Made by a program: the position numbers and the translations under genes. The notes under the pieces were generated by a model. That model ran no database searches. It was not told the DNA's origin and was given only the letters and a program-made list of their open reading frames with translations. Positions 3,623 to 4,006 of a DNA stretch of 64,000 nucleotides are shown piece by piece. The DNA is taken from NCBI RefSeq assembly GCF_006345805.1, contig NC_043020.1:17360001-17424000 (forward strand), given 5' to 3'. Numbering within the stretch: position 1 is the stretch's first letter; each line of letters starts with the position of its first letter. The DNA comes from Octopus sinensis (taxonomy: Eukaryota).

Positions 3623-4003
3623 GCGTCCCCAAAGTCCATCCCCTCCTCGCCGTGGTGGGGACGCTGGCAACGGGTAGTGTCAGAGATATGCCGTAGGGAA
3701 CTTCGGTTCCTGGTAGGGCCACCCAAGGTGGATTGGTCTGACACCGAGTGGTATTAGGGCCACAACCCGACAGACGGGGCTCCGGTGAAAATCCTCGGAG
3801 TGTCTGCTTCGGCAACCGGCGGCTCCTCAGTCGTTCTGTCCCTGCGTCTGCGGACATTCTGCGGCAAATAGGATGTCTCTACATGCGGGATTGCTGGGGA
3901 CCGCTTGTGAAATCCACATATCCCCACGAAACTTTTTCCATGAGTAGAAGAAGCCGACTCAACCCGCCCAGGGTGAATGTCGCCACTAGTACAAGTAAGT
4001 AAG

Positions 4004-4006
<3 letters not shown>
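3623..4006 (+). ncRNA. Short GC-rich element beginning with a putative HDV-like ribozyme and ending in an (AAGT)n tail
   Basis: P1 GCGTCCCC (3623-3630) pairs with GGGGACGC (3657-3664). L3-like TCCTCGC (3644-3650), then GGCAAC after P1, and candidate CNRA J4/2 with P2 partners. Fold judged by eye. Confidence 0.55.

What the first reader, a model, noticed from the sequence alone, without database searches (positions are those of the whole stretch)
3623..4006. 380-bp element that starts exactly at an HDV-like ribozyme fold
Seen: the unique sequence begins at G3623, directly after (AT)n. GCGTCCCC pairs perfectly with GGGGACGC (3657-3664) as P1, enclosing TCCTCGC (the HDV/R2 L3 motif) and followed by TGGCAAC (HDV has GGGCAAC). 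There are two possible P2/J4/2 registers. In one, AGTCCATC pairs with GGTGGATT (3727-3734) after CCAA. In the other, a long P4 (GTGTCAGA/TCTGACAC plus a cUUCGg hairpin at 3696-3711) leads to ACAGA (3770-3774). Both fit the CNRA J4/2 pattern. The element ends in (AAGT)n and has no RT ORF. Known: HDV-like ribozymes define the 5' ends of R2 and RTE LINEs, and R2 has short internally deleted derivatives. Inference: a ribozyme-headed, SINE-like non-autonomous element. Caveat: P3/L3 is about 2 nt longer than canonical.
Basis: partly seen in the sequence, partly recalled or inferred. Interest (0 to 1): 0.8.

Follow-up and report, generated by a model that had tools for sequence, protein, structure and literature searches.

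The report
Ribozyme-headed retroelement copy in octopus DNA
A 384-base insertion in an (AT)n repeat of an octopus-like genome starts exactly where a predicted HDV-like self-cleaving RNA would cut, so it is probably a short, non-coding passenger copy of a jumping gene, a known kind of element not yet reported in cephalopods.

Summary
Window 3623-4006 is a GC-rich (57% against 39%) stretch with no coding signal. It occurs once in the window and splits an (AT)n tract. Its first 112 nt fit an HDV-like double pseudoknot:
- P1: 3623-3629/3658-3664, seven Watson-Crick pairs.
- P2: 3633-3640/3727-3734, 8 bp.
- J4/2: CCAA at 3723-3726, catalytic C3723.
- L3: UCGCCGU, with a two-pair P1.1.
- Predicted cut: exactly at the (AT)n/element boundary.

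Rfam gives only a sub-threshold match (drz-Fpra model, 17.9 bits against a gathering score of 44), but it starts at G3623. A descriptor this strict gives 0.03 hits per shuffled window. The P2/CNRA combination alone has P=0.018. The minus strand gives nothing.

The most likely reading is a TPRT-made copy of a self-cleaved RNA. It would be an internally deleted, non-autonomous (SIDE-like) derivative of a ribozyme-headed non-LTR retrotransposon. It is not a pol III SINE.

Three things could not be tested because no cephalopod genome could be searched by DNA: copy number, the autonomous partner and covariation. Self-cleavage is untested. This is a new member of a known kind, of moderate interest.

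The parts
3610..3622 (.). 5' flank: (AT)6.5 remnant of the interrupted microsatellite. It lies next to a truncated minus-strand tRNA-derived SINE (about 3485-3609).
   Evidence: Sequence. Comparison with other SINE copies in the window.
3623..3734 (+). Candidate HDV-like self-cleaving ribozyme, 112 nt. The predicted cut is 5' of G3623.
   Evidence: Rfam RF02682 match at 3623-3693, model positions 1-74, 17.9 bits. Descriptor scans. P2 enumeration.
3623..3629 (+). P1 5' strand (GCGUCCC). It pairs with 3658-3664. An optional eighth pair is C3630-G3657.
   Evidence: The P1 hairpin has z = -3.3.
3633..3640 (+). P2 5' strand (AGUCCAUC).
   Evidence: Duplex energy -8.2 kcal/mol.
3643..3657 (+). P3 and L3. 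P3 pairs are C3643-G3657, U3644 against U3656 (mismatch), C3645-G3655 and C3646-G3654. L3 is UCGCCGU (3647-3653). The alternative register is L3 = UCCUCGCCGU (3644-3653).
   Evidence: Rfam alignment. Register enumeration. R2 core primer.
3658..3666 (+). P1 3' strand (GGGACGC, 3658-3664), then U3665 and G3666. These two form P1.1 with G3649 and C3648.
   Evidence: The only register with a two-pair P1.1.
3667..3722 (+). P4 domain. It starts with GCAAC and contains a cUUCGg-capped 6-bp hairpin (3696-3711). There is no clean closing stem.
   Evidence: Folds. P4 is described as highly variable in R2 ribozymes (PMC3774820).
3723..3726 (+). J4/2, CCAA (CNRA pattern). C3723 is the candidate catalytic cytosine.
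3727..3734 (+). P2 3' strand (GGUGGAUU).
3735..3992 (+). Non-coding body, presumed to be the module recognised by a partner reverse transcriptase. It contains UCUGACAC (3737-3744), which can pair with 3677-3684 and compete with the ribozyme fold. It also contains a second C(UUCG)G hairpin at 3806-3813.
   Evidence: No protein homologues.
3993..4006 (+). 3' tail, (AAGT)3AA. This is the only AAGT-class repeat in the window.
4007..4075 (.). 3' flank: (AT)n, the rest of the interrupted microsatellite. It is itself the tail of a minus-strand SINE-like repeat lying from 4076 to about 4300.

Best explanation
Window 3623-4006 is a retro-inserted copy of a short non-coding RNA whose 5' end was made by its own HDV-like ribozyme. 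This is the proposed sequence of events.

1. A master copy is read through from a neighbouring promoter.
2. The first ~112 nt fold into the double pseudoknot: P1 3623-3629/3658-3664, P2 3633-3640/3727-3734, P3 and L3 at 3643-3657, P1.1 C3648-G3666 and G3649-U3665, and J4/2 CCAA.
3. C3723 acts as the general acid or base, and the RNA cuts itself 5' of G3623.
4. The 3' body and (AAGT)n tail are recognised by the reverse transcriptase of an autonomous non-LTR element. Candidates are R4/Dong-type or RTE-type LINEs, both recently active in octopus.
5. Target-primed reverse transcription at a nick in an (AT)n tract then produces a full-length copy that begins with G3623.

The element has no ORF and no pol III promoter. 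It is therefore best described as a SIDE-like (short internally deleted) non-autonomous element, or as one internally deleted copy of such a LINE.

What is shown: the fold-compatible sequence, its statistics, the strand, the boundaries and the absence of coding capacity. What is inferred: self-cleavage, mobilisation in trans, and the existence of a family.
For: - All helices and motifs are present.
- Rfam's drz-Fpra model aligns from model position 1 at G3623.
- There is only one CNRA+P2 solution, with P = 0.018.
- The strict descriptor expects 0.03 hits per window.
- The very relaxed descriptor gives no hit on the minus strand of 3400-4200. Nearly all plus-strand hits (36 of 46), including every one that starts inside the element's 5' end, converge on C3723.
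- P1 begins at the first non-microsatellite base, and (AT)n lies on both sides although (AT)n covers only 2.7% of the window.
- The element is 57% GC with CpG o/e 0.81, against 39% and 0.54 for the window. This fits a young insertion.
- The tail is the only AAGT-class repeat in the window.
- A second retro-copy in the window, U6 plus 57 nt plus A10, is also bracketed by (AT)n with a precise RNA 5' end.
- Precedents exist. R2 SIDEs consist of a ribozyme plus a 3' UTR (PMC3414825). The ribozymes of R4, Dong, Baggins and L1Tc cleave at the element's 5' end, and their P4 and J1/4 are variable (PMC3774820).
- Dong-R4 and RTE are the recently active LINE clades in O. vulgaris (PMC13282606).
Against: - The Rfam score of 17.9 bits is far below the gathering score of 44. 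E = 0.77 for the 601-nt stretch, and no other HDV-like family matches.
- P3 has only two G-C pairs plus a mismatch in either register. Two or three unpaired bases lie between P2 and P3.
- P4 has no closing stem, and the bases before C3723 are not the G-G seen in relatives with a CAAC P4 start.
- The minimum-free-energy fold of 3623-3750 prefers the 3677-3684/3737-3744 helix and a CCACC/GGUGG hairpin, which sequester the P2 3' strand.
- The 112-nt region as a whole is not unusually stable, z = -0.16.
- There is only one copy in 64 kb.
- No partner LINE was found. The Dong-like fragment (5029-6368, minus strand) and the RTE fragment (11851-12183) in the window share no sequence with the element.
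Confidence: 0.6

Rival explanations
1. This is a one-off, dead-on-arrival copy. A full-length ribozyme-headed LINE RNA was reverse-transcribed with a large internal deletion or template jump, giving a single 384-bp relic. It is not a member of a propagating non-autonomous family.
For: There is a single copy in the window. No relatives were retrievable. R2 SIDEs are reported as rare even where R2 is common (PMC3414825).
Against: The window is only about 0.002% of an octopus-sized genome, so one copy says little. The high CpG content, perfect P1 and intact tail would fit either reading.
Confidence: 0.22
2. This is a chance look-alike. It would be a GC-rich fragment of some other origin that happens to satisfy a loose HDV-like descriptor, with no ribozyme ancestry.
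For: The relaxed descriptor finds 2.5 hits per shuffled window and two junk hits in the real window. The Rfam score is below threshold. P3 and P4 are imperfect. The same core pattern hits 110 unrelated prokaryotic or metagenomic sites, none with a ribozyme context.
Against: With an all-Watson-Crick P1 and P2 of at least 8 bp the expectation falls to 0.03. Several independent features add to this: the GCAAC start of P4, the R2-like CCTCCTCG..TGGT core, and P1 starting exactly at the microsatellite boundary. My rough product of these odds is below 1e-3 per window. This is inference, not a computed value.
Confidence: 0.1
3. This is a minus-strand reading. The stretch would be the 5' end of an (ACTT)n-specific Dong/R4-like LINE lying on the minus strand. 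The (AAGT)3 would be the remnant of its target microsatellite, and the plus-strand 'ribozyme' would be accidental.
For: A Dong-clade LINE fragment lies 1 kb away on the minus strand. Its relative in one other assembly is flanked by (ACTT)n-type repeats on both sides, and two further relatives carry the repeat directly upstream of their 5' ends. (ACTT)n is the reverse complement of (AAGT)n. (AAGT)3 is unique in the window.
Against: No HDV-like fold or ORF start exists on the minus strand. There is no sequence similarity to those LINE 5' ends. A 5'-only LINE fragment is the opposite of the usual 5' truncation. The other flank is (AT)n, not (ACTT)n, whereas the plus-strand reading has the same repeat on both sides.
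Confidence: 0.06

Closest known systems
R2 SIDEs and R2/R1 hybrid SIDEs of Drosophila (Eickbush and Eickbush 2012, PMC3414825)
   Same: Both are short (about 0.5 kb) elements with no ORF, made of a 5' HDV-like ribozyme joined to a LINE-type 3' end. Both depend on read-through transcription plus self-cleavage and on a partner's TPRT. Neither is transcribed by pol III. The core reads CCTCCTCG..TGGT in both.
   Different: The Drosophila elements sit in 28S rDNA at the R2 or R1 sites, and their LINE partners are known. This element sits in an (AT)n microsatellite, ends in (AAGT)n and has no identified partner. Its L3/P3 region carries 3 extra nucleotides. Its activity and copy number are untested.
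5' ribozymes of R4-clade elements (R4, Dong) and of Baggins and L1Tc (Eickbush et al. 2013, PMC3774820)
   Same: The cut is predicted at the very first nucleotide of the element rather than upstream in the target. Dong-type elements are microsatellite-specific. A Dong-clade LINE fragment is present in this window, and the clade is active in octopus.
   Different: Those are autonomous LINEs with RT and RLE ORFs. No sequence link was found between this element and the Dong-like LINEs examined. My scans did not detect a ribozyme at the 5' ends of those LINEs.
NARTc / SIDER elements of trypanosomatids carrying the Pr77 HDV-like ribozyme (PMC3185411, PMC4035085)
   Same: These are non-autonomous, dispersed derivatives that keep the LINE's 5' HDV-like ribozyme.
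   Different: Pr77 is also an internal promoter, is 77 nt long and starts with C1. The lineage (ingi/L1Tc) and the host are different.
drz-Fpra-1, Rfam RF02682 (HDV ribozyme from F. prausnitzii)
   Same: This is the only Rfam model that matches. It shares CCUC..CGUGGU, the spacing of P1', and an extra nucleotide before GGCAAC.
   Different: It is a bacterial, minimal ribozyme upstream of glmM. The score of 17.9 is well below the family threshold of 44, so the element is not a member of that family.
RTE-associated HDV-like ribozymes (Ruminski et al. 2011, as summarised in PMC6765202) and octopus RTE-2_OV (PMC9115989)
   Same: RTEs have 5' HDV-like ribozymes in other animals and microsatellite 3' tails. 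[quoted passage not shown] Here too a reading frame runs into the tail.
   Different: The 84-aa frame has no homologue among 1.84 billion representative proteins. The RTE fragment in this window ends in (ATAG)n, not (AAGT)n.

Membership tests
HDV-like self-cleaving ribozymes | P1 of 6-7 bp whose first nucleotide is the cleavage site | tested here: met
   There are seven Watson-Crick pairs, 3623-3629/3658-3664. T3622 and T3665 cannot extend the helix. z = -3.3.
HDV-like self-cleaving ribozymes | P3 of about 3 bp closing an L3 of about 7 nt with a conserved C and G, immediately 5' of P1' | tested here: inconclusive
   A 7-nt L3, UCGCCGU, with C at position 2 and G at position 6, exists. Its P3 has only C3645-G3655 and C3646-G3654, plus a U-U mismatch and C3643-G3657. 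The other register gives a 10-nt L3.
HDV-like self-cleaving ribozymes | P1.1: L3 positions 2-3 pair with the two nucleotides after P1' | tested here: met
C3648-G3666 and G3649-U3665 pair in the 7-nt L3 register.
HDV-like self-cleaving ribozymes | J4/2 with a catalytic C (CNRA), followed at once by a P2 3' strand of at least 5 bp that pairs next to P3 | tested here: met
   CCAA at 3723-3726 is followed by an 8-bp P2. It is the unique solution, P = 0.018. However, 2-3 unpaired bases separate P2 from P3.
HDV-like self-cleaving ribozymes | P4 hairpin between J1/4 and J4/2 (variable, dispensable in some members) | tested here: inconclusive
   The 56-nt domain has a cUUCGg hairpin but no closing stem. 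R2 ribozymes show the same variability.
HDV-like self-cleaving ribozymes | Reaches the curated score of an Rfam HDV-type model | tested here: not met
   The best match is RF02682 at 17.9 bits against a gathering score of 44. No other HDV-type family matches at E up to 10.
HDV-like self-cleaving ribozymes | Covariation in P1-P4 among homologues | not testable with these tools
   No homologue was obtainable.
HDV-like self-cleaving ribozymes | Site-specific self-cleavage giving 5'-OH and 2',3'-cyclic phosphate ends, lost on mutating the J4/2 C | not testable with these tools
   This needs a bench assay.
Non-autonomous non-LTR element (SIDE sensu Eickbush) | No coding capacity | tested here: met
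   The longest frames are 83-86 aa. They have no homologues and no Pfam hit.
Non-autonomous non-LTR element (SIDE sensu Eickbush) | Many copies with the same ends and different flanks | tested here: inconclusive
   There is one copy in 64 kb. There are none in 21 kb of O. bimaculoides DNA or in about 87 kb of other loci. The whole genome could not be searched.
Non-autonomous non-LTR element (SIDE sensu Eickbush) | 5' and 3' ends shared with an autonomous LINE of the same genome | tested here: inconclusive
   No similarity to the Dong-like or RTE fragments of the window or to the fetched Dong-like LINEs. Other LINE families were not available.
Non-autonomous non-LTR element (SIDE sensu Eickbush) | Insertion signature (target-site duplication or interrupted target) | tested here: inconclusive
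   (AT)n lies on both sides. This fits an interrupted microsatellite, but no discrete duplication can be delimited.
SINE in the strict sense | Internal pol III promoter from tRNA, 5S or 7SL | tested here: not met
   ARAGORN finds nothing. There are no tRNA, 5S or 7SL Rfam matches in 3500-4100 at E up to 10.

The most novel reading that the evidence does not exclude
The copy belongs to a still-active, multi-copy family of ribozyme-headed SIDEs in octopods. The family would use read-through transcription plus HDV-like self-cleavage in place of a promoter. It would parasitise one of the LINE clades reported as active in the octopus brain (Dong-R4 or RTE) and prefer (TA)n microsatellites as targets. 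That would be the first HDV-like ribozyme family described in cephalopods. It might also account for part of the ~900 'unclassified SINE' families of O. vulgaris.
Probability: 0.25. Interest if true: 0.6.

Novelty: new member of a known kind. Interest (0 to 1): 0.45.

Why it matters
HDV-like ribozymes at the 5' ends of R2, R4/Dong, RTE, Baggins and L1Tc elements, and their non-autonomous derivatives, are established. The principle here is therefore not new.

The host is what would be new. A full-text search found no paper linking HDV-like ribozymes with octopus. Yet octopus genomes are unusually rich in recently active LINEs and in unclassified SINE-like families (PMC13282606).

A confirmed ribozyme-headed passenger family would matter in three ways:
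- It would give a simple marker, a fixed 5' end with a 5'-OH, for tracking LINE-driven mobilisation in octopus tissues.
- It would help classify 'unknown' repeats.
- It would add a natural variant with a shifted P3/L3 register to the known sequence space of the fold.

Tried and rejected
1. **ORFs of the element as probes for other copies.** I used the ORFs as protein probes against the 5.8-billion protein index and the 1.84-billion representative library. Nothing came back except two low-complexity artefacts.

2. **Exact 27-mer of the core in JGI metagenomes.** This gave 0 hits.

3. **P1-agnostic core pattern.** I searched CCTCNCCGTGGTGN8GGCAAC in metagenome, viral and prokaryote collections and got 110 hits. 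Of these, 21 had some upstream complement to P1'. The recurrent one lies inside a Lachnospiraceae protein-coding gene, and none reaches any Rfam ribozyme model. I rejected them all as chance.

4. **Neighbouring Dong-like LINE as partner.** I fetched relatives (L111, L113-L115) and an O. bimaculoides fragment (L112). They show no similarity to the element, and neither Rfam nor the descriptor finds a convincing ribozyme at their 5' ends.

5. **RTE fragment at 11851-12183 as partner.** It has a different tail, (ATAG)n, and no similarity.

6. **Stored part of the O. vulgaris transcriptome supplement.** No match to six 14-15-mers of the element.

Long P4 with J4/2 ACAGA fails the P2 rule.

8. **Thermodynamic support for the whole 112 nt or 384 nt.** There is none: z = -0.16 and -1.5. 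This is expected for a pseudoknot, so I did not count it against the fold.

9. **Viral ribozyme sequence.** I did not re-type it for comparison. I used non-viral relatives instead.

Full report
**Context**

The window is eukaryotic and repeat-rich. It holds a full-length U6 snRNA (114 bits), many microsatellites and SINE families, and mariner-like transposase fragments. Its interspersed repeats match a 21-kb Octopus bimaculoides locus at 71-88% identity. They match nothing in loci from three other assemblies. The window therefore comes from an octopod.

**The observation**

- An (AT)6.5 tract ends at T3622.
- GCGTCCCC (3623-3630) pairs perfectly with GGGGACGC (3657-3664). T3622 and T3665 cannot extend the helix.
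- TCCTCGC (3644-3650) lies inside the helix and TGGCAAC (3665-3671) follows it.
- AGTCCATC (3633-3640) pairs with GGTGGATT (3727-3734) directly after CCAA.
- The GTGTCAGA/TCTGACAC helix and a cUUCGg hairpin exist.
- The stretch ends in (AAGT)3AA, followed by about 68 nt of (AT)n.

The element is 57% G+C with CpG o/e 0.81, in a window of 39% and 0.54. It occurs once in the window. Its longest frames (83-86 aa) have no homologues and no Pfam domain.

**Which fold**

I enumerated every CNRA site downstream of P1' and asked for a helix that starts immediately after it and pairs with the segment 5' of P3.
- Only one solution has at least 5 bp: CCAA (3723-3726) followed by the 8-bp P2.

The 'too long' L3 has a simple explanation.
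- The conserved core of Drosophila R2 ribozymes reads CCTCCTCGTGGTRTY (primer sequence in PMC3414825). The element reads CCTCCTCG[CCG]TGGTG, three nucleotides longer.
- The motif contains CC twice. The second CC (3645-3646) can serve as the P3 strand.
- L3 is then UCGCCGU (7 nt, U at position 1, C at 2, G at 6).
- P1.1 is then C3648-G3666 plus G3649-U3665.
- Exactly two nucleotides then separate P1' from GCAAC.

Rfam's alignment to the F. prausnitzii HDV-like model picks this register, starting at model position 1 on G3623. In my register enumeration only the placements of L3 that start at U3647 give a two-pair P1.1 together with the seven-pair P1 starting at G3623.

Weak points remain.
- P3 has only two G-C pairs around a U-U mismatch.
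- Two or three bases are unpaired between P2 and P3.
- The 56-nt P4 domain has a good cUUCGg hairpin but no closing stem.

The R2 literature describes similar latitude. P4 is 'highly variable', J1/4 is 0-2 nt, and mismatches occur in P1-P3 (PMC3774820).

**Is it chance?**

A relaxed descriptor is not informative on its own. It gives 2.5 hits per shuffled window and two junk hits in low-complexity DNA of the real window.

Requiring what the candidate actually has, an all-Watson-Crick P1 and P2 of at least 8 bp, leaves 0.03 hits per shuffled window on both strands. Further evidence:
- Given the 5' half, CNRA followed by at least 8 bp has P = 0.018.
- The P1 hairpin has z = -3.3.
- The Rfam match is weak: 17.9 bits against a gathering score of 44, E = 0.77 for 601 nt against 4227 families. 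Its E-value for that single family, scaled to the whole window, would be about 0.02 (my arithmetic). The model does not see P2.
- P1 starts at the first base after the microsatellite. The descriptor does not use this fact.
- A very relaxed scan gives no hit on the minus strand of 3400-4200. Most plus-strand hits (36 of 46), including all that begin within the element's first bases, converge on C3723.

Taken together I consider ribozyme ancestry likely (about 0.8). I rate activity of this copy as roughly even odds.

Thermodynamics does not help. The nested minimum-free-energy fold keeps P1 but prefers the 3677-3684/3737-3744 helix and a CCACC/GGUGG hairpin that sequester the P2 3' strand. This could be an inhibitory alternative fold and should be tested with constructs of different 3' ends.

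**Insertion anatomy**

- Upstream of the (AT)6.5 lies a minus-strand tRNA-derived SINE that lacks its head. This shows when it is compared with four other copies in the window.
- Downstream, the (AT)n runs into a minus-strand SINE-like repeat whose tail it forms.
- The element therefore splits one (AT)n tract. Such tracts cover only 2.7% of the window.
- (AAGT)3 is the only repeat of its class in the window. It therefore belongs to the element rather than to the locus.
- A second retro-copy in the window has the same layout: (AT)18, then U6 from its +1 base, 57 nt, A10, then (TA)n.

This is what target-primed reverse transcription at AT-rich nicks would leave. It fits an RNA whose 5' end was G3623.

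**Search for relatives and a partner**

No tool allowed a DNA search of cephalopod genomes.
- Protein-probe tricks and scans of metagenome, viral and prokaryote collections gave nothing relevant.
- A 1.3-kb minus-strand LINE fragment (5029-6368) carries the CCHC knuckle and the PD..D..K endonuclease of the R2 superfamily.
- Its full-length relative in L111 scores highest against Dong in the published R2/R4 alignment: 188, against 96 for R4 and 72 or less for the other elements compared (R2s, R8, Baggins, L1Tc).
- That relative is bracketed by (ACTT)n-type repeats on both sides. The two relatives in the other assemblies have the repeat directly upstream of their 5' ends, and one of them also has it downstream. 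(ACTT)n is the reverse complement of the element's tail.

I therefore examined a minus-strand reading. It fails, for these reasons:
- There is no fold and no ORF start on that strand.
- There is no similarity to the 5' ends of those LINEs.
- The wrong repeat lies at the other end.

I could not detect ribozymes at the 5' ends of those LINEs. An RTE fragment at 11851-12183 ends in (ATAG)n and is unrelated. The partner remains unknown.

Candidate clades exist in the host. Dong-R4 (5 families, 1129 recent insertions) and RTE (13 families) are among the recently active LINE clades of O. vulgaris, with Dong-R4 contributing the most recent insertions. About 900 SINE families there are unclassified (PMC13282606). 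RTE-2_OV has a microsatellite starting at the end of its ORF (PMC9115989).

**Comparison with what is known**

The anatomy is that of a SIDE: a 5' HDV-like ribozyme plus a LINE-type 3' end, with no ORF and no pol III promoter (PMC3414825). Cleavage at the element's first base matches R4, Dong, Baggins and L1Tc (PMC3774820). It is also analogous to NARTc and SIDER in trypanosomatids (PMC4035085). Reviews already note HDV-like ribozymes in LINEs and non-autonomous elements of diverse metazoans (PMC6765202).

It is not a member of any Rfam HDV-type family by score, and not a SINE in the strict sense. No paper in the library links HDV-like ribozymes with octopus.

**Verdict**

- Best reading (0.6): a retro-inserted, non-coding, ribozyme-headed SIDE-like element or single internally deleted LINE copy.
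- Novelty: a new member of a known kind.
- Interest: moderate.
- The decisive steps are a genome-wide copy and partner search with covariation analysis, and a cleavage assay with a C3723 mutant.

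Noticed in passing
window 5029-6368 (minus strand); L111 8385-12700; L114 about 8220-12600; L115 about 7900 onward: A Dong/R4-clade LINE fragment (CCHC knuckle plus PD..D..K endonuclease) lies 1 kb from the element. Its full-length relative in one other assembly is flanked on both sides by (ACTT)n-type repeats, and relatives in two more assemblies carry the repeat at their 5' junction. 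This suggests an (ACTT)n-specific lineage. In the window a decayed ACTT-like stretch follows the 3' UTR at about 4840-4860.
   Followed up: partly
window 33526-33745: A full-length U6 snRNA (33564-33670, 114 bits) starts directly after (AT)18. It is followed by 57 nt of SINE-like sequence, A10 and (TA)n. This looks like a chimeric U6 retro-copy inserted in an (AT)n tract rather than a promoter-bearing gene. Its 5' stem carries a compensatory G-U-A-C variant.
   Followed up: partly
window 11851-12183 (+): The C-terminal end of an RTE-like LINE ORF (...GRGQPRTRWLDTIK...DRTEWRTLI...). The stop codon runs straight into a short (ATAG)2 tail. AGAT-class repeats are among the commonest microsatellites in the window.
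   Followed up: partly
window 1974-3035 (-), 17541-17882 (-), 30571-31083 (-): Frameshifted mariner/Tc1-like transposase fragments (for example ...ITQDETWVHHDDPETK...).
   Followed up: no
window 1013-1496, 7313-7950, 9325-10057, 17110-17384, 23876-24359, 28498-28860, 29235-29688: A family of 184-bp tandem units is present at seven sites in both orientations, with 80-92% identity between copies.
   Followed up: no
window 56449-57971: An array of 58-59-bp tandem repeats, about 25 units in two blocks.
   Followed up: no
window 3714-3722 and 3755-3763: The 9-mer UAGGGCCAC occurs twice inside the element. One copy lies at the end of the P4 domain and the other 41 nt downstream. Each is followed by a C-rich run. 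This could be an internal duplication or alternative pairing partners. It is unexplained.
   Followed up: no
L005, L010, L018, L044, L046, L073: The degenerate ribozyme-core pattern recurs in a conserved protein-coding gene of Lachnospiraceae-like gut bacteria, with a fortuitous upstream complement to 'P1''. This is a reminder that the 18-nt core alone is not diagnostic.
   Followed up: yes
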